A stretch of 64,000 nucleotides of DNA from Ylistrum balloti (lineage: Eukaryota). Positions 1 to 36,268 of this stretch are shown piece by piece. The translations under genes were made by a program, and so were the position numbers. The stretch lies in assembly GCF_031769215.1 (NCBI RefSeq), contig NW_026782274.1, positions 496,001-560,000 on the forward strand. Reading direction: 5' to 3'. Under the pieces are notes generated by a model. That model searched no databases and had not been told where the DNA came from. It worked only from the letters and a program-made list of their open reading frames with translations. The first letter of the stretch is position 1; each line of letters starts with the position of its first letter.

Positions 1-192
1 ATTTTAAAGATCACAAAATCGATTAGTAACTATGGTAACCAGTTCTTAATGTTTACAAGACGAACTTATATTTTGCCAGTGATTCATTTGTAATATATTC
101 AAAGTATTGAATTTTCTGCACTTAGCGAATGTGTAACATAATAGTTAGGCTTCACAGCACTGTTTAACAAAGATGTGTTCTTAAAATTACAG

Positions 193-3100
193 AAAAAATG
201 GCGGGAAAATCCTGGATGCGAGGAGATGTTTCATCACATGAGTCTATTAACAATGGACAGTATGATGAAGTGTTTGTTTGGTCACCATAGCAACTGTCAG
301 CTGGAAACGTATGCTTTATTTGTAACAAAACCACAGTTGATGGTGTCTCGTTCTTAGTTTTCATATTAGATTGCTTTTTCGTACAAATTGATAATTTACC
401 GACATTGTTTGGTCCGAAGATAATCCTCATGAATAAATGCACATGGACTTCAAGAGGAAATAAATTACATTTTCGTCCCTCTATCAATAACTAATATGTT
501 ATGGGTTGTCTTTTCTCCACCAGGGTGCGCCCCGCGTACATCCAGTGTGTGTATGACGTCTCTGACCTCATCATCAAGAGGATCATGAATCCGCTTCATC
601 ACTACGGCTTCATATACTCTATGTCTGAAAACGGGTAACCATCACTTAACAATAGTCCGAGACTGGATCAATATAAACTTCGTACTCCTTGTCTGAAAAC
701 GGGTAAACATCACTTAACAATAGTCCGAGACTGGATCAATATAAACTTCATAAACTCCTTGTCTGAAAACGGGTAAACATCACTTAACTATAGTCCGAGA
801 CTGGATCAATATAAACTTCGTACTCCTTGTCTGAAAACGGGTAACTATCACTTAACAATAGTCCGAGACTGGATCAATATAAACTTCATAAACTCCTTGT
901 CTGAAAACGGGTAACCATCACTTAACAATAGTCCGAGACAGGATCAATATAAACTTCGTACTCCTTGTCTGAAAACGGGTAAACATCACTTAACAATAGT
1001 CCGAGACTGGATCAATATAAACTTCATATGCTCTATGTCTGAAAACGGGTAACCATCACTTAACTATAGTCCGAGACAGGATCAATATAAACTTCGTACT
1101 CCTTGTCTGAAAACGGGTAAACATCACTTAACAATAGTCCGAGACTGGATCAATATAAACTTCATAAACTCCTTGTCTGAAAACGGGTAAACATCACTTA
1201 ACTATAGTCCGAGACAGGATCAATATAAACTTCATATGCTCTATGTCTGAAAACGGGTAAACATCACTTAACAATAGTCCGAGACTGGATCAATATAAAC
1301 TTCATATACTCTATGTCTGAAAACGGGTAAACATCACTTAACAATAGTCCGAGACTGGATCAATATAAACTTCATATACTCTATGTCTGAAAACGGGTAA
1401 ACATCACTTAACAATAGTCCGAGACTGGATCAATATAAACTTCATATGCTCCATGTCTGAAAACGGGTAAACATCACTTAACAATAGTCCGAGACTGGAT
1501 CAATATAAACTTCATATGCTCTATGTCTGAAAACGGGTAAACGTCACTTAACAATAGTCCGAGACTGGATCAATATAAACTTCATATGCTCTATGTCTGA
1601 AAACGGGTAAACGTCACTTAACAATAGTCCGAGACTGGATCAATATAAACTTCATATGCTCTATGTCTGAAAACGGGTAACCGTCACTTAACAATAGTCC
1701 GAGACTGGATCAATATAAACTTCATATGCTCTATGTCTGAAAACGGGTAACCATCACTTAACTATAGTCCGAGACAGGATCAATATAAACTTCGTACTCC
1801 TTGTCTGAAAACGGGTAACCATCACTTAACAATAGTCCGAGACTGGATCAATATAAACTTCATATACTCTATGTCTGAAAACGGGTAAATGTATACCACA
1901 CATACATATTGTTCGATGGCTCAAGATGTTAAGATGTTTCTATAGTGTTTAATATTAGTCCATCCTCAAACCAGCCTTATCAGCAATTGGCATGGAGAAA
2001 TATACCCTATTCTGAAAACAAAGAAATGGAGGCTTTTTTTTTTATATCTATCGTCAAAATATCGTCATATTCTTGTACCATTATTTGCCTAAAACATTTT
2101 TGCCTCCTGGTTGTAAGACGCTCCAAGAAATGAATACTGCGTGCTTCATGAAATAATATATGGTTTGATTTTGCAGCATACATTACGAGGAGTGGTTGCA
2201 AAGGAAATGTGAACATTCCTAAATATAGCGCGCCTTTATTGAAAGATATAATTTAAGGACTCTTCTGACTTGCATTGTTAATACTGAGCAAGTGTTATCT
2301 AATATGATAATGCGTTCCGATTCTTTGTTGCAGACGTAAATTTAAATACGCTTGCGATACAATACACGGACACTCGAATATGTTGATAGAACAGAGGAGA
2401 AAATTGTTAGAGACAGAGAAATCCGGATCAAGAAACGTCGACTTTCTGGACATTTTACTCACGGCAAAGGTACCTATGTAAACATATATTCTGAATCGAT
2501 GAGCAAAGGCTTGGGAACAAGTAACAAAGTAATCGTGAGGAAAAACATGGCAGTACTGTTATACTGATGTTGTTTGTTTGCAAATCTACTGACATAAAGG
2601 AATGACAATGATTCCTAAGCTATATTAAGCTTGCATTTTTTCTGTGCGCGATGATAGCCGTTCACGTGATACGCAATAGCGCTATTTATTTCTCGAAATC
2701 GCCTCCCTCTCTACATTCAAATGAAACTATTGAAAGTTGGACACAAGACATAAGTGCCATCATTCTGTCATCACATCTTAATATGAATGTATTTGTACTC
2801 CCGTTGCAGGACTCGGACGGCCAAGGACTGAGTGACCAGGAGATTCAGGACGAGGTGGACACATTTATGTTTGCGGGTCATGATTCCACAGCCAGTACAT
2901 TGTCCTGGTGTCTTTATAACCTGGCCCTACATCCCGAGTATCAGGACCTGTGTCGGGAGGAGGTGGAGCGGGAATGGGGGGACAAGTCCGAGCTCACGTG
3001 GTAGGTCAGGTTTATCTGTCTACTACAACAATACTTATGTCTTACTGTTGTCAGGATTCATAAGATAGCTCGACTGATGATCGGCAACATGTCTACATTA

Positions 3101-3623
3101 AGAAAGAACAGTTTATCATTGAATTTATAAAATAGACTAAGCGATCCGTGTACTTCTAAATTAAGTTTTGAGATTAACAACATAAATAATAACAAAGATT
3201 CTTCCTCACATTATAACGTGGTTTAATTTTCGTGGTAGGGACGACATTCACAAAGTGTCCTTCACCTTTAGCTGTATCAAAGAAAGTCAGAGGTTATTTC
3301 CACCTGTGCCAAATGTGTCCAGGTGTGCTGAAAAGGACATTACCTTACCTGATGGCCGCAATATACCAACAGGTGAGACATAACACGTGATCGACTGCTA
3401 CTATGTTTAGGTTTGTTATTTTCGCGACAGCTGACGTCATGCGAGGACGGCATCCACTTAACAATTAAAAAGAAATGTACACTGAATCAACATACTATAG
3501 AATTGTAGAAGGTTAACTTTAGTGGGTACTACAAATCCACAAATTAATGGACAGTTTAAAATTCACAATATGTTTAGTGCACGTGGAATTCTTTAGTACT
3601 AGTTAACTACGAAATAAAGAGAT

Positions 3624-3683
<60 letters not shown>

Positions 3684-5204
3684 TGCAAAATCTTAAGCTC
3701 GCGAAGGTTTGACTTTTCAGTAGAATGGTGGTCTTAAACAGTCAAGCTATGTTGAGGAAGATGAACCGACATATACACCATAGCCCTTAGCCGTCCAGTT
3801 CTAAGACCTCAGCTTTTACACGATATTCATTGACAATGAAGAATAATTTAAGCTGCTTAAATGGCATTTTGGGATGCTGCACGGACAGGAGAGCTCTGCA
3901 TATTCCTGAATGTTATATTCGAATAGTCAACGACAATATTGATAATTGTTTCTCCTTTCAGGTATGAGAATGGCAGTGTCATTGTTTGCTCTACACAGGA
4001 ACCCGGATGTTTGGGACAATCCTGAAGTACGTTGTTATATTAGTATTGATTTACCTGAAGTTCGTGTAGTACTGTAAGGGTATGAATGAACTTTTCTTTT
4101 TGATATTTCAAACATGAAAAACGCCCCTATGTAATCTGGATGTTATGTAAATATTTAGATGTATGAGTGTATGAAGTCAGTCTGTTTATGGTTCTTCACA
4201 AGACTTGTGTAGTTGATTTACATAGGTCACCTCACCAGGACAACGTGACCTGACAATGACATTAATGAACATATTTTAGATATATCTTATTTGATCAATG
4301 AAGCAGAAAACGCTTCTTCTTCGGAAACAAATTGTCGTCTTGCCCTTAAATAAGTTTCTTACGTTTGTTCATATTTTGTCTTAGTTTTACTCTTATGCTT
4401 CACACTTTAGGTCCTTAGCATCATTGACGAGACCTATAAGAACGAAACAGCTATATGATGTTTCATTTATTGTTTGGCCCTGCTGTATCTTAATATAAAT
4501 TTGTATCAGAAGGCGCTATTGACTTGTTTCTCTAGTGCAATCTTTCATAGGAGTTTAAATTTGAATTCAGATTCTGTGGACATGTCCGTATTTTTTAGTT
4601 GTTTTGATTTGTTCCCTAAATGACCTATGGTCACTTATGATTATTCGTACAGGAATTTGACCCATACAGATTTTCCGAAGAGAACAAGAAAACCAATGCC
4701 GGCTCCGGGAATTTCATCCCTTTTTCAATGGGCCCTAGGTAATATTGATACCCCCAATGTCCTTATTAATCTGAGCTAAGATTTCACTTATTTGTATGCA
4801 GATCAGACCTGAATAAATTATGTACATATCTGTATGAATTCTATGCTTATAAACTTGAGATCCGATTATATTGATACCGTACCGTTATCCTGGTAATACC
4901 GGCATATTACAAGGAAAATTAAAAACTGAATCGGCGCGGTTTACCAGTTGTCCTAAACTTAAATATTGAAAATATTAAAGATATCTGATACATCCAAGAA
5001 ATTTCGAGGAAACTTAAACTAATATTTTATTATTTCAGAAACTGTATAGGACAGGCTTTCGCAACGACCCAGTTGAAGGTTGTCGTTCCAACGGTATTAC
5101 GTAACTTCCGGTTGACCCTAGACCCCACTCGGCCAGCGGAACCGGAAGCCATGCTCATCCTTAGAAGTAAAAATGGACTTTATCTTAATATTAAAGCATT
5201 GTGA
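193..5204 (+). CDS. Cytochrome P450, CYP4 clan, 5'-partial (N-terminal exons lie upstream of the window). Exons 193-308, 524-634, 2334-2469, 2810-3000, 3239-3372, 3962-4026, 4653-4738, 5039-5204
   Basis: Eight GT-AG exons join in phase (1005 nt, 334 aa plus stop). Motifs: DFLDILL, EVDTFMFAGHDST (I-helix), ESQR (ExxR), DPYRF, FSMGPRNCIG (heme Cys). AATAAA at 5315 and 5333. Confidence 0.93.
608..1889 (+). repeat. 68/70-bp minisatellite derived from the CYP4 exon/intron junction (19 copies of GTCTGAAAACGG|GTAA)
   Basis: Core counted at 623, 691, 761, 829, 899, 967, 1037, 1105, 1175, 1245, 1315, 1385, 1455, 1525, 1595, 1665, 1735, 1803, 1873. The first copy is the real exon end and donor (634/635). 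Confidence 0.97.
3627..3681 (+). repeat. (GA)n microsatellite in a CYP4 intron
   Basis: Uninterrupted GA run. Confidence 0.97.
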
Positions 5205-5850
5205 TCAGCGATATAAATGAAACTGAAATTGCACAAAAGACGTAAAAGTGCAATATTGAACTGAAGTGTCACTCTATTTTTGAAATTAGATGGGATAGTA
5301 ACGTTAACACTTACAATAAAGCTTTACCGTACAATAAAATTATATCAATACCATATGTGAGCTGTTTCGTTATATGTTACAAGTGTATAGAGAATACATG
5401 GCCAGTGTCTTAAAATATAAGCTGTATTTTGAAGCGAGACAAAAGTGGCGAGCCTCTACAACTGACCATTTATTTTATTTATCCTGTAACACTGATTGAA
5501 AATCAGACCATCAAACTTCAACAGTTTTGTTAACTCTGTGTTTACCTGACTTTACAGTTACGCTGAACTTTGCCTGATGACGAACGTCCAAATAATTGCT
5601 CCGCGCGGAAACAATTCCAAAGTTCATCGGATATAATAGCGATTTTATGAATTTTCATAAATCAATAAATCAGTACAACATGTAAAATCGCTTATTTCAA
5701 CAACTATTTATATTTTAAACGTAAAATCTAAGTAAATTCAGATAGTAATTCTGTTGAATTACCGCACGTGCTAAATAACAGCTGTTTTCCGTCACTGCCG
5801 AATACAGCAAAATATATGTGGCAAGTGTATTCCAACAACGGCTGCGCCAT

Positions 5851-5970
5851 TGCAGTGGGTGGAGATATAGCAAACCTATGTTTGCAGGGGTGGAGATATA
5901 GCAGACCTACATTTGCAGTGATGGGAATATAACAAACCTACCGTTTGCAGGAGTATGGGGATATAGCAAA
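5851..5970 (+). repeat. About 31-bp degenerate tandem repeat (about 4 copies) between the convergent CYP4 and FMO 3' ends
   Basis: Recurring TTTGCAG..GGAGATATAGCAAACCTA unit. Confidence 0.75.
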
Positions 5971-6368
5971 TTATTCATATACACCTGCGATTACCTAGTT
6001 GAGATGGGAGGGGCAAGCACGTATATCATTTAACGGGCAAATATGTAATATGTATGATAAAGTCAGTCGGACAAGTAATCAAAAGAAATTTTATTTTTAA
6101 GTAAATGCAGAGATACAGCTGATTGAAAATGAAGGTTTACAAAATATAAGCCATCTGCATATACAAATGGTAGAATCTGACATTGAATCAATTTACTGTC
6201 GATATATTACGGGTCTTCTAACGCAACTGGAGGCTTATTTTCTGAAGTCCGTGTCACTCTATGCTTTGGATACTGGATCACTTTGTGGAAAGTTAGGAGT
6301 CTTGCATCATAATCAAATACATGGTTCATATGATACAATTTGTCACTTTGTTTCTGAAACACATACGA

Positions 6369-8226
6369 CTACGAGAATTTTACAAGATTAGTGACGTAGC
6401 CATTAGCAATCACGTATCTGAAGACGTAGAAAAGAAGGACTAAGAAACATATTTTCTTGAAGAGAAGAATCCAGCCGTCGTAAAGTCCGTCCCTCTCTCC
6501 TTCCCCTGACTGTCGCGATTTCATAGGCAGATATGTATGTTCCTCCACCCTTTCGATCGCGTTCTTGGCACCTTCCCAAGAGCCGGGACCGTCCAGGCGC
6601 CATTGTACTGGGGTAGCTGGCCCAAAATACAGTTTATACCAAAGTTTCGGATCAGAGAAGAAGTGTTTCCAGAGGTCCGGTTTACATCCGATCATTGCAC
6701 TAAGTCGGTCGAGGTACTGAATGAAGTAAACCTGCAGACTATACCTGGGAGAGTCGACATATTTCGCTTTGATAAAATCTTTGCGTTTTTCTACATGGGC
6801 AAGACGTTTGGATGCGCTAGGTAACTTAGATTTTCCAGCAAACACCCTGGTGATACATCTTGCTTGCATTTCTAAAACTGGCGGAAGCGAGCCAAACGGT
6901 TGGACTAAGCCGACAACACCGAGGGTGCATGGGTTCAAATCAGTTGGAAACATCAGTTCGTACAGATAAGGATAATGTCCTTCAATTTTGATGATTCCAT
7001 CATCAAGAAAAGGAAAATCAAAGTTGAATCCCGTAGCAAGGATGACAACATCGATGTTCTTAAGAACTGAGCCGTCGTCGAATATAGCGCCATCTGTTGT
7101 GAACTCCTTCACATTGCACTTCACATTAATAGTGCCTAGTAGGATTCTGTTCGGAAGGTCGTCGCTAATAGTGACAACACCCGCGTCAAAGCAGTAGTTT
7201 GGCGACAGGCCGTAGTTGGAATGTTTATAGCGACGATTTATACGGTGGAAGAAAACGGGTCGCATGAGACTCCAAGGCAGGCTCTGGGAAAATCTGTTGA
7301 TGGCGAGATGATCAAACGGGACGCCGTACTCTGCAGCTCTCGAGATTACATATGTCCCTCGTCGGCTTGCTACATATACCTGCAAATAGAATTATTGAAA
7401 GAATTTCACTGATTAGACCGGAAAGTTTTCTGACTGGGCGTGAAATGACAGATACAATAGTTTAGCTTAGCCACATGCAGACCAAGTAAATGATTATATT
7501 TTCATCGTGCCCATTTTCAAATTTAAGGACTTCAAAACATATTGTGATAAACTTGTCCCCTTAATGGTCAAAACAAGATCATTGTACTCTTATGCTTACG
7601 TGTTCAGCATGACGACTCAACTCGCAGGCGACATCGGAGCCGGAATTACCAATGCCGATCACCAATATTCTCTTCCCTTCGAACCCATGGAAGTCCTTGT
7701 AATCGTGAGTGTGTATGACCTTGCCTTTGAATTTATCTAGACCAGAGAATGTCGGCACATTCGGAATACTGAGGTGTCCGTTACACACAATAACAAAATC
7801 AGTCTTCACATTCCGTGATTTGCCAGTGCTTAAATTCTTCACTGACGTCACCCAACTTCCGGTGTCGTCGAAATCGTCTGCCTTTTTAACGTCCTCAACA
7901 ATGTGGCTGAAAGTTATGTAGTTCATCAGGCCAAAATTTTCTGCATAGAGTTGGAGGTATTTCTTAAAGTGTTTGTGTCCCATGAAGTTTGGGAACTCTT
8001 TGGGGATCGGAAAGTCACTGTAACAGGTCATTTCTTTACTAGTGTTAATACTACATGAGTTGTAAAGGCTTGGGTCGCCATCTTTAGACCAGTTGTGGTA
8101 ATTCCAGAGTCCCCCAATGTCCGTATCCTTCTCAAAGCATATTGGTTCCATTCCCTCGTCCAGACATTGTTTGACCGCAGCCAGTCCGGCCACACCCGCC
8201 CCTATTACCAGCACTGTTTTTGCCAT
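6369..8226 (-). CDS. Flavin-containing monooxygenase (class B, FMO family), 545 aa. Coding exons 8226-7600 and 7379-6369
   Basis: GAGVAG (FAD site), FKGKVIHTHDYK (FMO fingerprint FxGxxxHxxxY), GIGNSG (NADPH site), LATGF, hydrophobic C-terminal anchor. One phase-0 GT-AG intron (7599-7380). A pyrimidine tract plus AG sits directly before the ATG, implying a 5'UTR intron. AATAAA on the minus strand at 6095-6090. Confidence 0.95.
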
Positions 8227-11200
8227 CTGAGATAAAAAATGCTTACAGGTAATATGTAAACTGTCACGTCAACGGCGTTAACTAAAAATATCAATATACT
8301 AATTTTTGTTTTAGGGGCGTTAAAAACGTGTTTGGAAAGCTAAACATTGTCTTAACATCTTATACAAGCTTTTACAAGTCTTCTAAAAAGATCAAAAAGA
8401 TTTTTCTGGTTTTTAAGGTGCAAATCTAGTGAATTACTAGCTTGTGAAACAGGATCTTCATAGCATCGGAAATGGCGATTTATAAAAAAATCAATTTCGA
8501 AAAATTAAAAAAAGAGAGAAAGGAAACATATACAAGCATAGTAGTAGTTAATTAATTAAGTAAGTAATTATCTATATCATTATTGAACACTGAAACAAAA
8601 TATAATATTTCTCATTATGTAATAATTCTTATGATTCCTCATCTTTGAAAAGCATATAAGAATATATTTAAAAACTCACAGGAAGTATTCAGTAATTTAG
8701 CATCGTAGATGTATTTATACCAGGGTCAATCTATGGTCACCCCGTCCCTAGCCACCAACGTTCTCTTATTATAAAGCTCAAAGGTTAGGTAATGTAACGA
8801 AAAATCTGATGTCATTTTCCACGGATACATCACAAGTGTCAAAGTGTTGTATTTCCGCGATGTCTAGGTACACAATACTCATATTACTATCAACGTTATT
8901 CCTTAGATCTACAATAGGAGTATACAATAAATAAATAAATAACACATAGATAAATACAGTAAATGATACATAGATAAATAGAAAAACAGATACATAGATA
9001 AATAAATGACGATGGATTATGGCGAAAAATTAACTGAATGAGTGCGATGATGTAGATATGGAGAAAGTTACTTAGAATTAGATACATAAAGATATCAATG
9101 ATGTCTTTAAATCGACGTTTGCATCTTTTTAATTCTTTTTATTATTTATTTTTTTGTATTTCCATCTTGCTGGACATTGGCAAAGCTTGAATTGTTACGT
9201 TGTAAAATATACTCTTCACGGGCTGGTCTTTCTTATACATTGAAAAAAAATATATTGGTTAGCAAAATACGCTGATCACCTCAAATATGAGTATAGTGAT
9301 TGTGATTTTTATATACTGAAATAGGTGAAAATGTTGAGAAGTTCACCGTGATTTTATTAAGAATGGATGACAGTGAAACAGGACTTTGTAGTTCTTGAAC
9401 AGAACACGACCCAAAAGTTATCATATCTCGTTCCTATCAACGAGACTGTTTGGACAACTCGAAAGGAAAATATCGATTTCTGTAGAAATACCACAAGAAT
9501 TTCAGGGTTACTAATGTCTGTATTTTATGGTAGCATACTAGATTTTAAAAGGTTATATCTGACATTAAATAATAACATTTACAAATATTATCAAACGATA
9601 TAAAAATGAAGTGATTTCATGGATCAAACAAACTGGTACCTTTTTCGACTGAATCTGGATGCTGGCAAGCGTCTGTTGGTGTAACGACGTACAGCGATAT
9701 ACGTTCTCGTGCACACGGGGTTATATCGTCACTACTTAGATAACCATAATTACATAAGGTGAAGGTCATGAGATTTTGTACCTGTGAAACAGACGGATAT
9801 GTAACGAACTTCCATGTGCCGCGCTTTGATATTAACACTTCACTGTGTGTGTAGTCTTTCAAACTTCACAACTTTGTTTAAACAATATCTTAATCAATTT
9901 GTTTTGAAAATAAATCCAGTATTTCGGAAACAACGAGTTAAATGGCTGATCAGCAAAAGCTATGCAATAGTTTAAGTTAGCAGTTGGTACCGAATAATTC
10001 CCTCTCTCTGCACTCTCTCATTTTTAATAATGTGTTTACTATTTTTTGTAATAAACATTCTTAAGAAAAGATTATTAAACACCTGGACAGTTCAACCATA
10101 CTGTCGTTTAGTTTAAAAATGTGGAATTTTGGTACCTCAATTTAGGTCATAGATACGTGTCAAAAGTACTGTTGCTACGGATGAACAGATGAACAGAATT
10201 CTCTGTATGCTTAGGGTTGATGAAGAATATTTTGGTATGGCATTTGTTAATTTCAAAATGAATCATTGCTTTCGATCCTGAATTAACCGTTTTATATTGA
10301 CACTGCCCCGAATGAGTTGTCTCTAAGATCACTTGATGCATGGGAGACAAAATTCATCTGAAGTGAAGTGAAACACTAAAAGAAAATACAGACAAATCAA
10401 CAGAATCATAATTCAAATTCGATAGAACGGAACGTTGTGAGTGTTGGCGTTTTCAGCTTTGAATTTGAATTATCGGTATTGAACAAAGTAAGATTTTCTA
10501 CACTGCCTCTTTTTATATATTCTTCATTTCTACTACGCTTTCCTTTTGGTCTTCAGTATCAGTATATTGTTTACCGCTTCTTTTCCTTTCAGTTTACTAA
10601 TATATTTAGTCGTTTTAGAGCACGTGTGTTGAGCAAGGAATAAAAAAAAAGCAGAATTGTTCATCGCCAACTCACTCAAAAGATTAAAGGACCGTCTCAT
10701 TTTTTATTGTTTATTCCTCCCCCCCCCCCCTCCTCTTTTCTCCACGGGCCTTTAATGTTATTTATTTACGTATTGATCATATGATTTCACCGAAAATGGA
10801 AAGGAATTATGACAAAATTGTTCGTGTGCGAGCTATATTTTGTGAGTATAATTTGTAATGTTATACAAGGTTCAAATCTTATGCCTAATTAGATGATTCG
10901 ACCCGTACTGAAGAGAACAGAATATATGACTTCATATTTTTTTAATATTTAAATTGATATAAACCATTTATCAGACTTCAGAAAAAAATCCCTACCGAGA
11001 AGCATGCCATATCTACTTGTTACCAGATCCACTTGTCACCATATCTCCTGAGAACGCGACCTGTGGTGTACTTATTGTAGGTCAGCCCTGGTTACGTAAG
11101 TATGAGGGTGTTTGTCCCTTGTTTTATCTTAATGCAGTCCTGAACTATTATGTTATTGTGGTGATTTGAGTACTTAACTGTGAAACCACTTGATCTTACT

Positions 11201-11569
11201 CTAACATTTTAGCACAGTTCGATTCTCATCTACCTTCCCAACCCGACCCAATTCATTCAATTTTATTTGTTTATTCATCACCTATTTATTTGTTTCACAT
11301 CAATTCAATTTAAACATGTTGACTTATTGCAATCGTTGTTAATATCTCATTGTCAAATGCACGTACTCGTGATCTTATTTTCAAATACATGTACTAGCGA
11401 TATGGAAATAATTCAGTCGTGCCGAATTAGGGAAAGAATGTCGTGATCTCATTTTTGATCATTTATGTAAATCAACGTTCAGATTTATTTTACACCAGAG
11501 GGATAAAACACTAATGATCCACCCCACCAATGTACAAGTACTGGAATCTTACACGTAATATACAATATT

Positions 11570-16839: not shown

Positions 16840-18039
16840 TTAAACCTTGCGTTTAATGACGTAATACTGAAATATCCCGGAGTTGTCAGTGGCGACACCT
16901 ACAGATTGCACTAGACTAAACTTCTGCAATCGCCTGAAGTTAGATGATGACAGAAGAACTGGAGTGTGACCAAACGTAACCATGAACCCGTTCTCTCGAA
17001 CAGTTGGTAGTAATGCATCCAAAAGGACTTCAGCCTCGGTGGAAGTGACGACTTCAGAATTCAAGAAACGATTGAAGCACACATCAGCAGTTCCGGTTGG
17101 TATCTTTGGATCCATTGCATTTCCACAGTGCACTTCATCGACTCGTTCTCTAGCAAAATCAGCCATTTGTTGACTAAGATCTTGACCGAAAGTGTAACTT
17201 TCTGGAAATGCTTTCTGTAACGAAGAGAGAAACACCCCGGTAGAACAGGCGGGGTCGTACAACCTTCCCATTGTCATGGCAACACCACCCAAGAACTGAA
17301 CAGTATACTGTCTTATCCGTTCCTCTCCATGGCTGAGCATTGCATCATAGGTATCGTCAACCTTCCATCCCTCCGCTGGGGAACACAGCTCCTTTCTGGA
17401 GGACTCCCTAAGGAGTGGGAAGGGATAGATAATTTCGACTTTGGATGAGTCCCTAGTCATGATATCCTCAAACAGTTTAAGTTTCTCGGAATTACCTAAG
17501 GGATAATAACTGACCTGTACCTCCTTCTCAGTAATGCGCTCATCGTAAAACAAGCCCAGAATCATATCAGCTGTCACCAAGCTGCAGTGGAGTTCCGGTA
17601 TCTTCCCGGCAATCCAATAATCTGACAAAATCTTTCTTCCGACCAATCTCCACGAACCCGGAACACCAGGTTTTCCCACATCAAGGAAAAATACACTTTG
17701 TGGTAGGTGATGAAATGGCTCGTTAATACGCCTCAAGTCTCTTTCCACGATATTTTCCCATGGTATAACTCTCTCTGGAGATGTACCAGGTGGCATTTTC
17801 TTTTCTTCATATCTTCTAACCTCGCTTATGATGAGTGAGAGACATTTGTTGTCGAGGTGACTCTCAGTGGTCTTACTCAAAGCATCACATAGAAGCTTCT
17901 TCCCGGCATCCCAATTTCCTGATGACAGCAGCTTTCTCGCCTTGTGAAAGTCATTCCGGATTTCTGGGTCATGGATACTTTTGAATATACCATCGTAGCT
18001 TGTAATAGCGTCGGTACGGAGATCCAAGTCATCCGCCAT
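16840..18039 (-). CDS. Intronless class I SAM-dependent transferase, 399 aa from the Kozak-context ATG at 18039; likely 3-amino-3-carboxypropyl (ACP) transferase of the Nat/isonocardicin synthase type
   Basis: Single ORF; CAAC-ATG-G context at 18039; SAM motif I YDPACSTG, motif II GQDLS, RFLNSEVV, FGHTP; AATAAA on the minus strand at 16777-16772. The Nat resemblance is from recall of family motifs, not a search. Confidence 0.85.
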   Translation of the reverse strand: MADDLDLRTDAITSYDGIFKSIHDPEIRNDFHKARKLLSSGNWDAGKKLLCDALSKTTESHLDNKCLSLIISEVRRYEEKKMPPGTSPERVIPWENIVERDLRRINEPFHHLPQSVFFLDVGKPGVPGSWRLVGRKILSDYWIAGKIPELHCSLVTADMILGLFYDERITEKEVQVSYYPLGNSEKLKLFEDIMTRDSSKVEIIYPFPLLRESSRKELCSPAEGWKVDDTYDAMLSHGEERIRQYTVQFLGGVAMTMGRLYDPACSTGVFLSSLQKAFPESYTFGQDLSQQMADFARERVDEVHCGNAMDPKIPTGTADVCFNRFLNSEVVTSTEAEVLLDALLPTVRENGFMVTFGHTPVLLSSSNFRRLQKFSLVQSVGVATDNSGIFQYYVIKRKV

Positions 18040-31258: not shown

Positions 31259-34200
31259 ATGCCTGTGATTGATATCCCTGACATTACGTCATGCACGAGC
31301 TATATCGCCGCGCTAGATTCCGATCGGTCAATTCCTAGCGCTGTCATTGGAGAAGGTAATCTGCTTCTGTCTTGCCTAGAATATTTGACAGATGCCAGCT
31401 TCACTATTTCAGCCGTCTTCACAGATACACCTGTAGTCAAAACCTTCTGCGAAGAGAAGAAAATACTTCAGTGGAAAAGAGGAACAGATATCGAACATGC
31501 CCTGAGAGATATTCCAATTGACTATCTTTTTAGTATATCTAATCCTAGAGTTTTGACAGATTCTGTATTACAAATACCCAGAAAACTGTCAATCAACTAC
31601 CATGATTCACCACTTCCCAGATATGCTGGAATCCACGCAACCAGCTGGGCCATCATCAATGGCGAATCGAACCATGGTATTTCCTGGCACGTAATCGAGA
31701 CGGGTATCGACACTGGAGATATTCTCCAGACAAGAGCAGTTAAAATTGATCCTGACGATTCTGCATTCACATTAAATATGAAATGCCAAGAAGCAGCCAA
31801 ATCAGCATTCCAAATTCTGATCAAGGATGTTAAACAGGACTGCATTAACCGAACGACACAACCGGTTTCTGGAAGGTCGTATTACGGGTTGCATGCCATA
31901 CCGCCAAACATTGGAGTCCTTAATTTCCAGACGTCCTGTACAAATATCTGCAATCTTGGAAGGGGACTGGAGTTCGGAACTCATGACAATGCACTTGGAA
32001 GCCCCAAAGTTATGACATCAACAGGCGATTTTGTGCTCGTCACAAATGTCGAAGAATCTAATTGCAGTTTTGACGAACATGTTAAACATGGAACTATCAC
32101 AGAAATAGTTGACGATACTTTGGTTGTCAAAACGCAGGGAAACTCGGTTTTGCTGTCAATTACAAAATTGGATGGATCCCATCTGTCGCCATCAGAATAC
32201 AGCGATCTTGGGATATCGGTTGGTGAAAAGCTTTCAAGTAATTTTGCGGTAGACACGGAAAATCTGACACAAATAAGAAAGAAGGAGACATTTTGGAGAA
32301 GAAAGTTAAAGATTTATGATCCAACGACATTTTTCCGACAAAGAATGAATGTGGTTGCAGGTATCATAGATGTTTCTACAGCAATCAACGTCAAGTCGAT
32401 CGTTATTCCGCTACCCGTCCCAAACATGAATGGACACAGCTTCCATACACATACTTGTGAACTTCTTATGTCAGCATTTGTTGCATTCATCGGACGAATG
32501 ACTTGTAACTCGAATGTCTCTCTCGGTATCCTGGCAAACAAGTCGACTGTACCCGAAATGGCAAGAGGACTTTACTCTGACATCTGTCCAGGAGTATTCA
32601 CCGTCGATCTACAGCAGAAAACACATGTTGTCTTGCATGACCTTTACGAAATGATAAAAACTTACAGAGAGGCACAATCGTTCTTAGTAGATGCGTTTTA
32701 CAGGTACCCTGAACTCCGTGGACAAAAGAGAACACCTCACCATAACATAGCGATAGGCCAAATTCCTAGTCATGCGTCAGCTACCGGTGTTGCACAGCAC
32801 GTTCTTCATGACTGCAACATATTGCTACTGTTTAATGACGACGGAGATGAGATGCATTTGATGTACAAGGAAAAGATCGGTCAAGATTTCCAATATATCA
32901 GTGATGTTCTTCAGCACTTCCCAACATTTCTCACTACTAGTGACCTGAATCAGCCTTTGCACGAGACTCATCTAGTCTCAGACGAGGAACTTAAACAACT
33001 TTATCTACAGCCTCTTCCTTTCAAGCCGTCAACCAAAAGCGTTTATGACGTTTTCGAAGAACAGTGTAGGTCTAGTCCAAATAACATAGCTCTGCGGTCA
33101 TCAGCTACATCATACACCTACAACCAGTGTAACGAGTTAGCAATGAAGGTTTCATGCCTTCTTGATGCCACATATGAAGATGAAAGAATCATTGGACTTC
33201 ATTTTCCAAATTCAATGGAATATGTAGTCTCCGTCATCGGCGTTTTGAAAACCAATCGTGCATTTCTGCCACTTCCCATAGATTACCCTGAAGAAAGGAT
33301 GACTTTCACTCTGCGAGATGCAAAAGTCCATAGTATGTTGACTACCGCCTCAGTTTATGAAAACCTGAAATCTAAGGGATTTTCATTGACACAGGTAGGA
33401 GCAGATGCTGTGCAGATAGATCGTAATGAAGTAATACTTGTTCGATTTGCGAAAAATGAGAACAAGGTGAAAGGAAATGAAAATGACTTTGTCCATATCA
33501 TTGATGGAAAGGCAAAAAAAGGCGGCGTCCAGACTGGCAGAATTCTGAATGGACATGAGGAATGTGGAAGGACAAAAAATGGAGAATGCGATGCTGATGA
33601 CTTTAAGATTCTCCAGAACAATGGCTTTACTTCAAAAATGACGAGTCAGATATTAGATGAGGAACTTTGTTACGTGATGTATACGTCAGGTTCCACTGGT
33701 AGACCTAAGGGAGTTCAAGTAAGCCACTCCGGTGTCGTCAATCTCGCTAAAGCGCAGATAGAGCTCTGGAGTCTTCACGATGGTGATGTGATTGCCCAAT
33801 TCGCCTCCATTGGATTCGACGCGACGGTATCTGAAATATTCACAGCCCTATTTTCTGGTGCAACTCTCGTTACTCTTTCCGACGAAGAACGTTTAGGCCA
33901 GGAATTCATCCGTACGTTAAACATGCTGGATGTGAATACAATCACACTGCCCCCATCCGCCCTCAACATATACAGTCCAAACGACCTACCCAAACTAGAA
34001 AAGGTTGTTACCGCTGGAGAAGCCTGTTCGCTAGGAACTGCCCTCAAATGGACGGTCGACAACAAGACAATAAGATTCTTCAACGCATACGGCCCGACTG
34101 AAACAACTGTTTGTGCAACATGTTATGAATTCAAATCGTCCGATGTCCACGTCGACAACACTCAAGACTTACCAATTGGCATGGCCATACCTGGCATGAG

Positions 34201-36268
34201 TGTATATCTTTTTGACAACTTCATGAAACCAGTTCCTCCTGATGTTGTTGGCGAGATCTACGTAGGAGGTATTGGTGTATCCAAGGGATACATCGGTCAC
34301 GCAGCGGAGCACAACTTGGAACGATTTGTCCAGAATCCAATGACAGATCAGCTTTGCCTGTTATACAAAACAGGCGATCACGCGTTTCAATCAAATGATG
34401 GCAATATCACTTACATCGGGAGGTTGGATGACATGATAAAGATCAGGGGCCAACGAGTTGACCTTAGTGAAATTGAGCAAGTTCTGATTCAACATACAAA
34501 GGTGGAACTTGCTGTCGTTGTAGCACATAGATGTACAGACTCGAATGAGATTAGTATAGCGGCGTATGTGGCACCTTCTTTCGTGTACTTGTCGGAATTA
34601 CGGGAGTACTTGACGAAAGCTCTTCCAAAATACATGATACCGACGTTCATTAAGAAAATTGAGGTAGCTGACTTCCCAATGACACTGAATGGCAAAATAG
34701 ACAGAAAACGTCTTGAAAAAGACGAATCTGTACATGAACAATCAAGATTTGGTGGAGGCAGTCATCTAAACGAAACGCAACTTGCTATAGCTCAACTTTG
34801 GTGTACAGTTCTCAAACTTAACGAATCGATAATACATGAATTTCACCGCCAGACATCTTTCAGTGAACTCGGCGGCAACTCTTTGCAGTTGGTGCTCCTA
34901 CAGCGTACGTTAGAAGACAAGCTCCATATCCAGTTGTCGTTTACAGACCTAGGTATGGCAGATACGATAGAGGAATTCTGCGACGTCATCAGAAGAAAGA
35001 AAGATATGCTCCGAAGATCTAATCAAAACAATTCAAATGATCTGCGTGATCTTCGTCAGGTAATAGTGCAGGATTCTATTCTAGATCCATCGATCATACC
35101 TCAACATGCTAGGCGTGGCTCTATTAAGTTCAGTCACTTCTCGGCGTTTGTACAGAAATGTTCCATGAAATACCCAAGGAACGCTCTAATGTCAGGCGTG
35201 ACCGGATTCCTGGGGGCGTATCTCCTGTCTGAACTTCTTGAACAAACAAACGCTCATGTGTGTTGTATGGTTCGAGAATCTACAGAGGCAAGGGGATTCG
35301 GTAGAATAGTTGAAAATCTCAGAAAGTACAACTTATGGAAAGTAGAATATGGGAGTAGAATCGCGGTAGTGATATCCGACCTATCACAGGAAAATCTCGG
35401 TATAGCGCCAGACATTTACACGGCACTTTGCAACGTCATCGATGTTGTATTCATGAATGCAGCCAAGATGAATTTCAACACTGATTATGATGACCACAAG
35501 GTTGCAAATGTCGACAGTACCAAGGAATTCATCAAATTCGCTGTAACAGGCACTCAGAAATATATATTTTCAACGTCATCGTTGAGCGTTTTCCTCTTCC
35601 CCAACAGCCCTTCCAGCACACCACCAACCAATCGAATGTGTTATGAGACCGAGTTCTGGGATGACCCTTGCACCTTAGAAGGGGGCTATGGAAAAAGCAA
35701 ATGGGCAAGTGAAAAATTGGTCGTGCAAGCACTCGAGTACCTCCCTGGCGGAGCTATATTCCGACCAGCAAGAATATCTGGATGCTCTTTTGACGGCGCT
35801 GGTCCAAGGAACGACCTTTTCGCGTCTACCTTAATCGGTATGACGCAATTAGGGTCGTTTCCCGACATGGACTTTCCCTACGATCTCACACCAGTGGACT
35901 ATGTAGCCAAGGCAATGGTGGAAATCTCTCTGCAGATTTGCAACGACAGTAACCATCATGAACATGTTTATCATCTGTTCAATTCTCAGACAATTCCTTT
36001 TAAGGACATTTTCAAAGGAATGGGTCTGAAGTCTCTTCCTCTTGAACAATGGCGCCAAGAACTCCGAAATGCATCTGACGACAGCAAGGTCCTTATCCCG
36101 TTTACACCGTTTTTCCATTCCGAGTTTTGGGACAAGGCGCCTCACTGGCCAGTATTTGACACTTCAAACACAGACAGACTTACCAGCGACCGCACAAAGG
36201 AACTATTGAAACCTTCAAAAGACCTCTTGTGCTTGTACAAAACATATTTTGGTCTAAATACCAAATAG
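31259..36268 (+). CDS. Monomodular NRPS, 1669 aa: formyltransferase (N and C subdomains), relic condensation lobe, adenylation (Tyr-type code), PCP, terminal NAD(P)H thioester reductase (FmtATR-like)
   Basis: F domain: NYHDSPLPRYAG and GIDTGD (Asn113, His115, Asp151). A domain: YVMYTSGSTGRPKG, FDAT, NAYGPTE, GEIYVGG..GY, YKTGD, GRLDDMIKIRGQRVDLSEIE, LPKYMIP, NGKID. T domain: LGGNSL (Ser1208). R domain: SGVTGFLG, STSS, YGKSK. Uninterrupted 5010-nt ORF; spliceosomal acceptor TTTATTACAG ends at 31245. Confidence 0.97.
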   Translation: MPVIDIPDITSCTSYIAALDSDRSIPSAVIGEGNLLLSCLEYLTDASFTISAVFTDTPVVKTFCEEKKILQWKRGTDIEHALRDIPIDYLFSISNPRVLTDSVLQIPRKLSINYHDSPLPRYAGIHATSWAIINGESNHGISWHVIETGIDTGDILQTRAVKIDPDDSAFTLNMKCQEAAKSAFQILIKDVKQDCINRTTQPVSGRSYYGLHAIPPNIGVLNFQTSCTNICNLGRGLEFGTHDNALGSPKVMTSTGDFVLVTNVEESNCSFDEHVKHGTITEIVDDTLVVKTQGNSVLLSITKLDGSHLSPSEYSDLGISVGEKLSSNFAVDTENLTQIRKKETFWRRKLKIYDPTTFFRQRMNVVAGIIDVSTAINVKSIVIPLPVPNMNGHSFHTHTCELLMSAFVAFIGRMTCNSNVSLGILANKSTVPEMARGLYSDICPGVFTVDLQQKTHVVLHDLYEMIKTYREAQSFLVDAFYRYPELRGQKRTPHHNIAIGQIPSHASATGVAQHVLHDCNILLLFNDDGDEMHLMYKEKIGQDFQYISDVLQHFPTFLTTSDLNQPLHETHLVSDEELKQLYLQPLPFKPSTKSVYDVFEEQCRSSPNNIALRSSATSYTYNQCNELAMKVSCLLDATYEDERIIGLHFPNSMEYVVSVIGVLKTNRAFLPLPIDYPEERMTFTLRDAKVHSMLTTASVYENLKSKGFSLTQVGADAVQIDRNEVILVRFAKNENKVKGNENDFVHIIDGKAKKGGVQTGRILNGHEECGRTKNGECDADDFKILQNNGFTSKMTSQILDEELCYVMYTSGSTGRPKGVQVSHSGVVNLAKAQIELWSLHDGDVIAQFASIGFDATVSEIFTALFSGATLVTLSDEERLGQEFIRTLNMLDVNTITLPPSALNIYSPNDLPKLEKVVTAGEACSLGTALKWTVDNKTIRFFNAYGPTETTVCATCYEFKSSDVHVDNTQDLPIGMAIPGMSVYLFDNFMKPVPPDVVGEIYVGGIGVSKGYIGHAAEHNLERFVQNPMTDQLCLLYKTGDHAFQSNDGNITYIGRLDDMIKIRGQRVDLSEIEQVLIQHTKVELAVVVAHRCTDSNEISIAAYVAPSFVYLSELREYLTKALPKYMIPTFIKKIEVADFPMTLNGKIDRKRLEKDESVHEQSRFGGGSHLNETQLAIAQLWCTVLKLNESIIHEFHRQTSFSELGGNSLQLVLLQRTLEDKLHIQLSFTDLGMADTIEEFCDVIRRKKDMLRRSNQNNSNDLRDLRQVIVQDSILDPSIIPQHARRGSIKFSHFSAFVQKCSMKYPRNALMSGVTGFLGAYLLSELLEQTNAHVCCMVRESTEARGFGRIVENLRKYNLWKVEYGSRIAVVISDLSQENLGIAPDIYTALCNVIDVVFMNAAKMNFNTDYDDHKVANVDSTKEFIKFAVTGTQKYIFSTSSLSVFLFPNSPSSTPPTNRMCYETEFWDDPCTLEGGYGKSKWASEKLVVQALEYLPGGAIFRPARISGCSFDGAGPRNDLFASTLIGMTQLGSFPDMDFPYDLTPVDYVAKAMVEISLQICNDSNHHEHVYHLFNSQTIPFKDIFKGMGLKSLPLEQWRQELRNASDDSKVLIPFTPFFHSEFWDKAPHWPVFDTSNTDRLTSDRTKELLKPSKDLLCLYKTYFGLNTK

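What the first reader, a model, noticed from the sequence alone, without database searches (positions are those of the whole stretch)
193..8226. Convergent FMO and CYP4 pair as a candidate amino acid to aldoxime to nitrile module
Turning Ar-O-CH2CH2-CH(NH2)COOH into Ar-O-CH2CH2-CN needs N-hydroxylation with decarboxylation to an aldoxime, then dehydration. The carbon count fits the 2-cyanoethyl ether of bursatellin and oxazinins exactly. As I recall, an FMO forms the aldoxime and a CYP4-family P450 dehydrates it in millipede cyanogenesis, and plant CYP79/CYP71 use the same logic. Here an FMO and a CYP4 sit tail-to-tail, with poly(A) signals under 800 bp apart, at the edge of the NRPS/ACT locus. 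I know of no assigned nitrile-forming enzymes for this pathway, so this is the most novel testable prediction.
Basis: inference. Interest (0 to 1): 0.85.

Follow-up and report, generated by a model that had tools for sequence, protein, structure and literature searches.

The report
Conserved FMO–CYP4 pair beside bursatellin genes
This scallop DNA carries a flavin monooxygenase gene and a CYP4-type P450 gene tail to tail beside the published mollusc bursatellin/oxazinin genes; the same two genes are neighbours in five bivalve orders, so they are testable but unproven candidates for making the compounds' nitrile group.

Summary
An intact two-exon FMO gene (545 aa, minus strand, 8226..6369) converges on the last eight exons of a CYP4-family P450 (plus strand, 193..5204; its 5' part lies before the window). 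The stop codons are 1164 bp apart.

The locus is the scallop copy of the published bur-ox cluster (Venugopalan & Schmidt, JACS 2025). That paper already lists two FMOs in the mussel cluster and predicts, without a test, that they install the nitrile. So the FMO half of the idea is not new. Its main text mentions no CYP4.

New here:
- The CYP4 belongs to a single-copy mollusc CYP4 subfamily (clade support 100/100).
- Its orthologue is the FMO's immediate neighbour in Pectinida, Mytilida, Ostreida, Unionida and Venerida. It is convergent in four; the FMO is inverted in Ruditapes.
- The order CYP4-FMO-ACT-P450 is the same in scallop and Ruditapes.
- In scallops the ACT-FMO pair was duplicated as a unit without the CYP4.
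- In abalone the genes are dispersed.

The millipede precedent holds (FMO makes the aldoxime, CYP4GL4 dehydrates it; PLoS Genet 2025). There is no biochemical evidence for the mollusc genes. The scan had not noted this pair before.

The parts
193..5204 (+). 3' two-thirds of a CYP4-family P450 gene. Exons: 193-308, 524-634, 2334-2469, 2810-3000, 3239-3372, 3962-4026, 4653-4738, 5039-5204 (TGA at 5202-5204). They encode the C-terminal 334 aa. The 5' exons lie before the window.
   Evidence: All borders are AG/GT and the reading frame is continuous. The exons are the only blocks conserved with A. irradians. One exon matches Pfam p450. The best solved structure is CYP4B1, at 1e-16 against 5e-8 for the next hit. 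The protein is 89% identical to A. irradians P0358 'cytochrome P450 4F12-like'.
2810..3000 (+). I-helix exon carrying the CYP4 signature, read here as EVDTFMFAGHDST.
   Evidence: Alignment. Other CYP4s read EVDTFMFEGHDTT. The Thr-to-Ser change is found in all 15 members of the mollusc clade. The Glu-to-Ala change (the site of the CYP4 haem ester bond, from general knowledge) is found only in scallops and Haliotis.
4653..5204 (+). The last two exons, with the haem-binding loop FSMGPRNCIG split across the intron.
   Evidence: The motif fits FxxGxRxCxG. The clade-specific residue is I/M/L/T where other CYP4s have Ala.
608..1889 (+). Minisatellite (70-bp unit, 18.5 copies) filling most of the intron after exon 524-634. 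Its unit begins with the last 27 bases of that exon and its GT donor.
   Evidence: Tandem Repeats Finder, score 2137. The exon end was read.
5205..6368 (.). Intergenic stretch between the two stop codons. It holds candidate poly(A) hexamers (plus strand 5315 and 5333; minus strand 6090-6095) and a 31-bp repeat at 5850-5970.
   Evidence: No Rfam family matches. Nothing here is conserved with A. irradians.
6369..7379 (-). FMO exon 2 (336 aa plus stop). It ends in a hydrophobic C-terminal anchor.
   Evidence: Pfam FMO-like positions 208-530 of 532, E 2e-86. The hydropathy maximum is at residues 511-530.
7600..8226 (-). FMO exon 1 (209 aa) with the FAD motif GAGVAG, the FMO motif FKGKVIHTHDY and the NADPH motif GIGNSG.
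   Evidence: Pfam FMO-like positions 1-211, E 4e-80. Motif positions 9, 166 and 191. Splice sites were read.
16840..18039 (-). Intronless aminocarboxypropyl transferase (ACT) of the bur-ox cluster. It makes the proposed FMO substrate.
   Evidence: Its orthologues are named 'isonocardicin synthase-like'. Pfam finds a methyltransferase domain. The mussel orthologue was characterised in PMC11869996.
19353..23234 (+). Bacterial-like P450, head to head with ACT. It is the p450 of the published cluster and a rival candidate for aldoxime dehydration.
   Evidence: Pfam p450 match on the last exon. It has the same position beside ACT in A. irradians and Ruditapes.
31259..36268 (+). FmtATR non-ribosomal peptide synthetase (formyltransferase, adenylation, carrier and reductase domains).
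   Evidence: Pfam Formyl_trans_N, AMP-binding, PP-binding and NAD_binding_4, in that order.

Best explanation
The FMO and the CYP4 are an anciently linked pair of membrane-anchored animal oxidases forming the outer edge of the bivalve bur-ox (bursatellin/oxazinin) gene neighbourhood. The most likely mechanism has three steps. First, ACT puts a 3-amino-3-carboxypropyl group on the tyrosinol phenol; this step is shown in the literature. Second, the FMO N-hydroxylates that alpha-amino group twice, with decarboxylation, to give the aldoxime; this is inferred. Third, the CYP4 dehydrates the aldoxime to the 2-cyanoethyl ether; this is also inferred. Shown here: gene structure, family membership, orthology, conserved adjacency, co-duplication of ACT with the FMO, and purifying selection. 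Inferred: every catalytic step assigned to the FMO and the CYP4.
For: 1. Family and integrity.
- The FMO has a full-length Pfam match and all three motifs. Its A. irradians orthologue P0001 (87% identical) matches ancestral mammalian FMO structures at E 1e-137 to 1e-142.
- The CYP4 matches CYP4B1 best among solved structures and is 44-46% identical to the vertebrate CYP4F/4B/4F22 representatives in the set.
- Against A. irradians, dN/dS is 0.033 for the FMO and 0.042 for the CYP4, although dS is saturated.

2. Orthology.
- The window CYP4 falls in a mollusc-only clade of 15 sequences with 100/100 support, whose branching follows the species tree.
- It is 56-89% identical to clade members and 41-49% identical to all other CYP4s, including other Haliotis CYP4s.

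3. Synteny. The FMO and this CYP4 are direct neighbours in:
- A. irradians;
- Mytilus coruscus, convergent, 9.4 kb apart;
- Saccostrea echinata, convergent, 12.3 kb apart with no gene called between them;
- Potamilus streckersoni, convergent;
- Ruditapes philippinarum, with the FMO inverted.
The order CYP4-FMO-ACT-P450 is the same in scallop and Ruditapes. The other neighbours differ between species (lectin, CwfJ-domain and TPR genes).

4. FMO-ACT coupling.
- A second ACT-FMO pair sits on another A. irradians chromosome.
- The FMO and ACT trees show matching pairs of pectinid paralogue clades.

5. Precedent.
- A clade I FMO plus a CYP4-clan P450 make a nitrile from an amino acid in a millipede (PMC12671775).
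- The bur-ox authors predict that the FMOs install the nitrile but name no dehydratase.

6. Location. The FMO has a C-terminal anchor and the CYP4 orthologues have an N-terminal anchor followed by FPGP. That would place both on the same membrane.
Against: - No biochemical, expression or metabolite evidence links either enzyme to the pathway.
- The duplicated ACT-FMO pair has no CYP4 beside it.
- In Haliotis the FMOs, ACT and the CYP4 orthologue are unlinked. The FMOs there sit next to a CYP2-like P450 instead.
- In Saccostrea no ACT or NRPS lies within 10 kb of the FMO-CYP4 pair.
- No named caenogastropod or heterobranch protein fell in the FMO or CYP4 clades, yet bursatellin itself comes from heterobranchs. 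The searches are word-limited, so this is weak evidence.
- This FMO clade may be the main or only mollusc FMO lineage and could have general duties.
- Old adjacency can persist without a shared function.
- The bacterial-like P450 beside ACT could be the dehydratase.
Confidence: 0.4

Rival explanations
1. Only the FMO, alone or with the second tandem FMO seen in mussel, oyster and Potamilus, serves the pathway. The CYP4 is a lipid or xenobiotic omega-hydroxylase that has simply stayed next door. Dehydration of the aldoxime would then be done by the bacterial-like P450 or by an unlinked enzyme.
For: - The ACT-FMO pair was duplicated and kept without a CYP4.
- The published cluster description lists FMOs but no CYP4.
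- The CYP4 is a slowly evolving single-copy gene, as housekeeping enzymes are.
- In H. cracherodii it stands alone.
- The bacterial-like P450 is head to head with ACT in scallop and Ruditapes.
Against: - The CYP4 has stayed the FMO's immediate neighbour in five bivalve orders while the other neighbours changed, and it survived a local inversion in Ruditapes.
- P450s are the only animal enzymes so far shown to dehydrate aldoximes, and one of them is a CYP4-clan enzyme.
Confidence: 0.25
2. Neither gene serves the pathway. FMO and CYP4 are an old pair of general detoxification or lipid oxidases, and the horizontally acquired ACT, P450 and NRPS genes happened to land beside them in an early mollusc. 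The linkage is inherited, not selected.
For: - Both proteins are canonical animal enzymes, close to vertebrate FMO and CYP4F/4B.
- No other mollusc FMO lineage turned up, so this clade may carry the general FMO functions.
- The genes are dispersed in Haliotis.
- In Saccostrea the pair lies among unrelated genes.
Against: - ACT and FMO were co-duplicated and both copies retained in Argopecten and Mizuhopecten.
- ACT-FMO linkage is seen in three bivalve subclasses here, and in Mytilus according to PMC11869996.
- The nitrile needs an N-oxidising enzyme, and none other is in the cluster.
Confidence: 0.2
3. The CYP4 does take part, but in another step. Candidates are benzylic hydroxylation of the tyrosinol, N-hydroxylation of the amino acid (CYP79-like), or the oxidative coupling that builds the oxazinin morpholinone. 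The FMO or the bacterial-like P450 would take the remaining steps.
For: The order of steps and the roles of the oxidases are undetermined according to the authors. CYP4 enzymes are primarily hydroxylases (general knowledge). The clade keeps an acid-alcohol pair (Asp-Ser) in the I helix, which is compatible with oxygen activation.
Against: The bacterial-like P450 is already a candidate for the hydroxylation. Nothing in the sequence points to any of these steps.
Confidence: 0.15

Closest known systems
bur-ox (bursatellin/oxazinin) gene cluster of molluscs: FmtATR NRPS, ACT, bacterial-like P450 and two FMOs (Venugopalan & Schmidt, J Am Chem Soc 2025; PMC11869996)
   Same: The window holds the scallop copy. 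It has FmtATR, ACT and the bacterial-like P450 head to head with ACT, plus an animal-type FMO next to ACT. The paper already predicts that the FMOs install the nitrile.
   Different: - The main scallop locus has one FMO, not two. A second ACT-FMO pair lies on another chromosome in A. irradians.
- The paper's main text names no CYP4 and calls the FMOs the only animal-derived genes of the cluster. Here a CYP4 orthologue flanks the FMO in five bivalve orders.
- The paper's supplementary figures are not held, so I cannot exclude that the gene is drawn there.
Millipede cyanogenesis enzymes ChuaMOxS (FMO, group B clade I) with CYP4GL4 and CYP30008A2 (Chamberlinius hualienensis; PLoS Genet 2025; PMC12671775)
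   Same: - The proposed logic is the same: a C-terminally anchored animal FMO makes an aldoxime from an alpha-amino acid, and a CYP4-clan P450 dehydrates it to a nitrile.
- There the FMO is substrate-specific and the P450s are broad. That fits one CYP4 serving two ACT-FMO pairs.
   Different: - The millipede substrate is free L-Phe. Here it would be the amino-acid end of an aryl homoserine ether.
- The millipede genes carry widely separated gene numbers (003298, 008368), so they are probably unlinked (my inference). The bivalve genes are adjacent.
- Any resemblance would be convergent. I could not compare sequences directly with the millipede enzymes.
Vertebrate CYP4F/CYP4B/CYP4A fatty-acid and xenobiotic omega-hydroxylases (structure: rabbit CYP4B1, 5T6Q/6C93)
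   Same: - CYP4B1 is the best solved-structure match, and identity to CYP4F/4B proteins is 44-46%.
- The window gene has the CYP4 I-helix signature and the haem loop, and its orthologues have an N-terminal anchor.
   Different: - The whole mollusc clade has Ser for the first Thr of GHDTT and a bulky residue for the Ala of PFSAGPR.
- Scallops and Haliotis have lost the Glu that forms the CYP4 haem ester.
- The substrate is unknown.
Plant CYP79/CYP71 and fern FOS1 aldoxime routes to nitriles and cyanogenic glucosides
   Same: The chemistry is the same: amino acid to N-hydroxy amino acid to aldoxime to nitrile. In ferns an FMO takes the first step (cited in PMC12671775).
   Different: The protein lineages are unrelated (plant CYP79/CYP71 and clade IV FMOs). 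No homology is claimed.

Membership tests
Class B flavin-containing monooxygenase (Pfam PF00743, animal clade I) | Full-length match to the FMO-like profile | tested here: met
   Exon 1 matches profile positions 1-211 and exon 2 positions 208-530 of 532, at E 4e-80 and 2e-86.
Class B flavin-containing monooxygenase (Pfam PF00743, animal clade I) | FAD GxGxxG, FMO-identifying FxGxxxHxxxY/F and NADPH GxGxxG motifs | tested here: met
   GAGVAG at residue 9, FKGKVIHTHDY at 166 and GIGNSG at 191.
Class B flavin-containing monooxygenase (Pfam PF00743, animal clade I) | C-terminal membrane anchor and closeness to vertebrate FMO1-5 | tested here: met
   The hydropathy maximum is at residues 511-530. 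The orthologue P0001 matches ancestral mammalian FMO2, FMO5 and FMO3-6 structures at 1e-137 to 1e-142.
CYP4 family of cytochrome P450 | P450 fold with the Cys haem loop FxxGxRxCxG | tested here: met
   Pfam p450 match on the I-helix exon and on the full-length orthologue P0358 at 2e-109. The loop reads FSMGPRNCIG.
CYP4 family of cytochrome P450 | At least 40% identity to named CYP4 proteins (the nomenclature rule quoted in PMC12671775) | tested here: met
   44-46% identity over about 331 aligned residues to the turtle CYP4F22-like, duck CYP4F8 and catfish CYP4B1-like representatives. Only the C-terminal 334 aa of the window gene could be compared.
CYP4 family of cytochrome P450 | I-helix signature EVDTFMFEGHDTT, including the Glu that esterifies the haem | tested here: inconclusive
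   The window reads EVDTFMFAGHDST, 11 of 13 positions. The Glu is Ala in scallops and Haliotis but is kept in most clade members.
bur-ox biosynthetic gene cluster | Physical linkage to FmtATR and ACT in this genome | tested here: met
   The FMO start lies 8.6 kb from ACT and 23 kb from the NRPS. The CYP4 is the next gene outward.
bur-ox biosynthetic gene cluster | Linkage conserved in other molluscs | tested here: met
   - FMO with ACT: A. irradians (two loci), Ruditapes, Potamilus and Mizuhopecten.
- CYP4 with FMO: A. irradians, Mytilus, Saccostrea, Potamilus and Ruditapes.
- Not met in Haliotis.
bur-ox biosynthetic gene cluster | Demonstrated role in bursatellin/oxazinin formation | not testable with these tools
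   This needs enzyme assays or gene knock-down. The literature has only a prediction for the FMOs.
FMO plus P450 aldoxime-to-nitrile pathway (millipede type) | The FMO converts an alpha-amino acid to an aldoxime | not testable with these tools
   Activity cannot be read from the sequence. ChuaMOxS is one of ten similar FMOs in that millipede and was identified only by assay.
FMO plus P450 aldoxime-to-nitrile pathway (millipede type) | The P450 dehydrates the aldoxime to the nitrile | not testable with these tools
   No sequence signature for this activity is known to me. The clade-specific I-helix and haem-loop changes are suggestive at most.
FMO plus P450 aldoxime-to-nitrile pathway (millipede type) | Sequence relationship to ChuaMOxS or CYP4GL4 | not tested
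Only clan-level likeness (clade I FMO, CYP4 clan) can be stated.

The most novel reading that the evidence does not exclude
Bivalves carry a physically linked two-enzyme nitrile synthase. A native animal FMO and a dedicated CYP4 subfamily member would act on the product of horizontally acquired, bacterial-like enzymes (NRPS, ACT), converting an aryl homoserine ether to a cyanoethyl ether through an aldoxime. This would be a second, independent animal invention of the millipede FMO/CYP4 solution. It would also be the first case in which such a pair has stayed adjacent since the major bivalve lineages diverged (by my estimate about half a billion years), inside an animal biosynthetic gene cluster of mixed native and acquired origin.
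Probability: 0.3. Interest if true: 0.75.

Novelty: new member of a known kind. Interest (0 to 1): 0.55.

Why it matters
How molluscs make the nitrile of bursatellins and oxazinins is the main open step of the only animal NRPS gene cluster with characterised tailoring enzymes. The published work names FMOs as a guess and offers no enzyme for the dehydration step.

A specific single-copy CYP4 subfamily has stayed next to the cluster's FMO across five bivalve orders. ACT and FMO duplicate together. An FMO plus a CYP4-clan P450 already do this chemistry in a millipede.

If confirmed, the pathway would extend the bur-ox cluster by one gene. It would be a second animal case of the FMO-plus-P450 aldoxime route. 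It could also supply enzymes for placing nitriles on tyrosine-derived scaffolds, a use the bur-ox authors themselves suggest.

If the CYP4 turns out to be an ordinary omega-hydroxylase, the result is still a clean example of very old gene adjacency without shared function.

Tried and rejected
- The representative-library search with the 72-aa I-helix exon returned mostly fused or fragmentary predictions and no scallop orthologue. I used the partial oyster protein P0057 as a stepping stone to the orthologue set.
- I considered the P450 beside the Haliotis FMOs as a CYP4 orthologue and rejected it. It gives no tblastn match, and its PPGP and AGTETT motifs are of CYP2 type.
- I considered the 1890-aa gene beside the Saccostrea FMOs as the NRPS and rejected it. 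It has no match to the scallop NRPS and no Pfam hit on record.
- I looked for an FMO pseudogene or a second FMO between the FMO and ACT in the window. There is none; the only insert is a reverse-transcriptase fragment.
- The region from the pair to ACT (window 1-20000) has no Rfam family, and the stretch between the two stop codons shares no conserved block with A. irradians.
- The poly(A) hexamers occur at about chance frequency, so I gave them no weight.
- dN/dS against the paralogous locus could not be computed because synonymous sites are saturated.
They gave only contig-length matches.
- The supplement of the bur-ox paper is not held.
- The scan's earlier notes hold nothing on this pair.

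Full report
**1. What is in the sequence**

The window is AT-rich animal DNA with no N runs. The scan's earlier notes call it a scallop. Its FMO is 87% identical to an Argopecten irradians protein over the full length (88% in exon 2) and 77% identical in exon 2 to a Mizuhopecten one. It therefore comes from a different pectinid.

The FMO gene lies on the minus strand and has two exons:
- Exon 1 is 8226..7600 (209 codons) and ends at a GTAAGC donor.
- Exon 2 is 7379..6369 (336 codons plus stop) and follows a TTGCAG acceptor. The product is 545 aa.
- Both exons match Pfam FMO-like end to end.
- The FAD, FMO-identifying and NADPH motifs and a C-terminal hydrophobic anchor are all present.
- The A. 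irradians orthologue matches ancestral mammalian FMO structures at about 1e-140.

The P450 lies on the plus strand:
- Eight exons with AG/GT borders (193-308 ... 5039-5204) give a continuous 334-aa C-terminal part.
- These exons are the only blocks that align with the A. irradians locus.
- The I-helix exon matches CYP4B1 far better than any other solved P450, at 1e-16 against 5e-8.
- The closest full-length non-mollusc relatives are vertebrate CYP4F/4B/4F22-like proteins at 44-46% identity.
- The 5' third of the gene lies before the window. The A. irradians, mussel, oyster and clam orthologues begin with a hydrophobic anchor and an FPGP hinge.

The two genes converge. Hexamers of this kind are expected by chance at this base composition.

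**2. Context and what is already published**

Further along the window lie three more genes:
- an intronless methyltransferase-fold gene at 16840-18039, minus strand;
- a P450 head to head with it at 19353-23234;
- an intronless 1669-aa protein at 31259-36268 with formyltransferase, adenylation, carrier and reductase domains.

Venugopalan & Schmidt (J Am Chem Soc 2025; PMC11869996) describe this bur-ox cluster in Mytilus as nrps (FmtATR), act, a bacterial-like p450 and two fmos. They show the reductase and ACT steps biochemically. They write that the P450 and the FMOs are predicted to install the hydroxyl and the nitrile respectively, pending biochemical characterisation.

So the FMO's presence and its suspected role in nitrile formation are published as a prediction. 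The main text mentions no second, animal-type P450, and it calls the FMOs the only animal-derived genes of the cluster. The supplement is not held. No later paper in the library addresses the nitrile step.

In Chamberlinius hualienensis the FMO ChuaMOxS makes phenylacetaldoxime from Phe, and CYP4GL4 (CYP4 clan) and CYP30008A2 (CYP2 clan) dehydrate it to the nitrile (PMC12671775).

**3. Is the CYP4 an ordinary paralogue or a specific orthologue?**

A search seeded with a partial oyster relative returned a sharply separated top group of 492-511-aa proteins plus two shorter predictions (437 and 448 aa). They come from Crassostrea, Saccostrea, Mytilus, Pinctada, Tegillarca, Argopecten, Ruditapes, Dreissena, Mya and Haliotis. 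Their E-values are 1e-116 or better. The next hits are deuterostome CYP4s at 1e-97 or worse.
- In an alignment the window protein is 56-89% identical to this group and 41-49% identical to all other CYP4s, including two other Haliotis CYP4s.
- A maximum-likelihood tree puts the 15 sequences in one clade with 100/100 support. Within it, pteriomorphs, imparidents and gastropods separate as in the species tree. It is a single-copy mollusc CYP4 subfamily.
- All members have Ser in place of the first Thr of GHDTT, and a bulky residue in place of Ala in PFSAGPR.
- The Glu that esterifies the haem in CYP4 enzymes (general knowledge) is Ala only in scallops and Haliotis.
- I draw no functional conclusion from these changes.

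**4. Synteny**

I fetched up to 10 kb on each side of FMO or CYP4 orthologues and located genes by the supplied gene calls and by tblastn with the window proteins.

| Species and locus | Gene order, written with the CYP4 on the plus strand | Notes |
|---|---|---|
| Window scallop | CYP4(+) FMO(-) ACT(-) P450b(+) ... NRPS(+) | Reference arrangement |
| A. irradians, chromosome CM084266 | Same order and orientations | |
| Ruditapes philippinarum | CYP4(+) FMO(+) ACT(-) P450b(+) | Same order, only the FMO inverted |
| Potamilus streckersoni | CYP4(+) FMO(-) second FMO(-) | The ACT gene carries the adjacent locus tag. The 15 best matches of the CYP4 fragment are all clade members |
| Mytilus coruscus | CYP4(+) then FMO(-), 9.4 kb apart | Convergent |
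| Saccostrea echinata | CYP4(+) then FMO(-), plus a second divergent FMO | 12.3 kb apart on one record, no gene called between; a CwfJ-domain gene lies beyond the CYP4 |
| Dreissena, Pinctada | Not resolved | FMO and CYP4 share a chromosome |
| Tegillarca, Pinctada | Not resolved | ACT and CYP4 share a chromosome |
| Haliotis | Dispersed | Two tandem FMOs next to a CYP2-like P450; ACT on another chromosome; the CYP4 orthologue stands alone |

The FMO-CYP4 adjacency is therefore ancestral to autobranch bivalves. It is kept in five orders while the outer neighbours differ.

**5. FMO phylogeny and the co-duplication**
- The window FMO lies in a mollusc-only clade with 100/100 support. That clade branches beyond annelid and vertebrate FMO5-like proteins, and its branching is broadly that of the species tree.
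- The second FMOs of oyster and Potamilus are fast-evolving lineage-specific copies. The Haliotis pair is a recent tandem duplicate.
- No other mollusc FMO lineage appeared in the search. This clade may therefore be the main mollusc FMO, but the search is word-limited.
- In A. irradians a second locus on another chromosome holds an ACT paralogue and an FMO paralogue with the same spacing and orientation, followed by a lectin gene and no CYP4.
- The FMO tree and the ACT tree each split the pectinid sequences into the same two paralogue clades. Mizuhopecten has both ACT copies, and one of them shares a contig with its FMO.
- ACT and FMO were therefore duplicated together in an early scallop, and both pairs were kept. 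This is the strongest evidence here that the FMO acts with ACT. It is also evidence that the CYP4 is not needed in cis.

**6. Selection and expression hints**
- Against A. irradians, dN/dS is 0.033 for the FMO and 0.042 for the CYP4, with saturated dS. Both genes are under strong purifying selection.
- Intron-free full-length copies of the mussel CYP4 occur on 1.8-kb contigs assembled from sequencing runs. Many short contigs carry full-length FMOs. This suggests that both are transcribed, but I could not test co-expression.

**7. Mechanism and rivals**

Best-supported reading (confidence 0.4): ACT attaches the 3-amino-3-carboxypropyl group, which is shown in the literature. The FMO then N-hydroxylates the alpha-amine twice, with decarboxylation, to give the aldoxime (inferred). 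The membrane-bound CYP4 dehydrates the aldoxime to the 2-cyanoethyl ether (inferred). In the millipede the FMO is narrow in substrate and the P450s are broad. That fits two ACT-FMO pairs sharing one CYP4.

Rivals:
- The FMO acts without the CYP4, and the bacterial-like P450 or an unlinked enzyme dehydrates the aldoxime (0.25).
- Both genes are general oxidases, and the linkage is only inherited (0.2).
- The CYP4 works at another step (0.15).

Points against the module:
- The genes are dispersed in abalone.
- No ACT or NRPS lies within 10 kb of the oyster pair.
- No close orthologues were found in heterobranchs, the source of bursatellin, though that search is weak.
- There is no biochemical evidence at all.

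**8. Verdict**

The FMO part repeats a published prediction. The new result is the recognition of a dedicated, syntenic CYP4 subfamily as a candidate extra member of the bur-ox neighbourhood, together with the co-duplication of ACT and FMO. I class this as a new member of a known kind and rate it moderately interesting, because it turns an open biosynthetic step into a defined two-enzyme experiment.

Noticed in passing
window 608-1889 (+): The CYP4 intron after exon 524-634 is filled by a minisatellite of 18.5 copies of a 70-bp unit (93% matches). The unit starts with the last 27 bases of the exon and includes its GT donor, so the intron carries about 18 extra copies of the exon end and splice donor. 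Whether these decoy donors are used is unknown.
   Followed up: partly
L002:616-11857 (A. irradians CM084271) and Mizuhopecten proteins P0201/P0003: A second ACT-FMO pair lies on another scallop chromosome, retained in two genera, with a C-type lectin gene in place of the CYP4. I could not see whether an NRPS or a bacterial-like P450 lies upstream, because the look-ups were exhausted.
   Followed up: partly
L004:10001-22265 (Haliotis asinina) and L006:10001-20100 (H. rubra): In abalone two tandem FMOs of the same clade are followed on the same strand by a CYP2-clan-like P450 (PPGP hinge, AGTETT I helix). The other millipede aldoxime dehydratase, CYP30008A2, is also a CYP2-clan enzyme. This could be a different FMO-P450 partnership or a coincidence.
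   Followed up: partly
L003:3106-5055 (Saccostrea echinata) and L009:710-2977 (Potamilus streckersoni): A second, fast-evolving FMO copy (38-55% identical to the window FMO) sits just upstream of the conserved FMO in oyster and in a freshwater mussel. This probably corresponds to the 'two fmos' of the published Mytilus cluster. The copy is not annotated in the Saccostrea gene calls.
   Followed up: partly
window 12011-13371 (-) and 45984-47494 (-): Reverse-transcriptase fragments (Pfam RVT_1) of retroelements are inserted between the FMO and ACT and downstream of the NRPS. They account for the wider FMO-ACT spacing in the window than in A. irradians.
   Followed up: partly
window 20840-21238 (+): Overlapping open reading frames inside the bacterial-like P450 gene show a repeated peptide pattern (SIEVSSHPDN... 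/ SRYPHIQI...). This points to a tandem DNA repeat within an intron.
   Followed up: no
window 52342-53148 (+): An open reading frame of 268 aa, acidic and serine-rich, has no Pfam match. Nothing links it to the cluster.
   Followed up: no
window 5850-5970: A 31-bp tandem repeat (3.8 copies) lies in the stretch between the two gene ends. It is not conserved in A. irradians.
   Followed up: no
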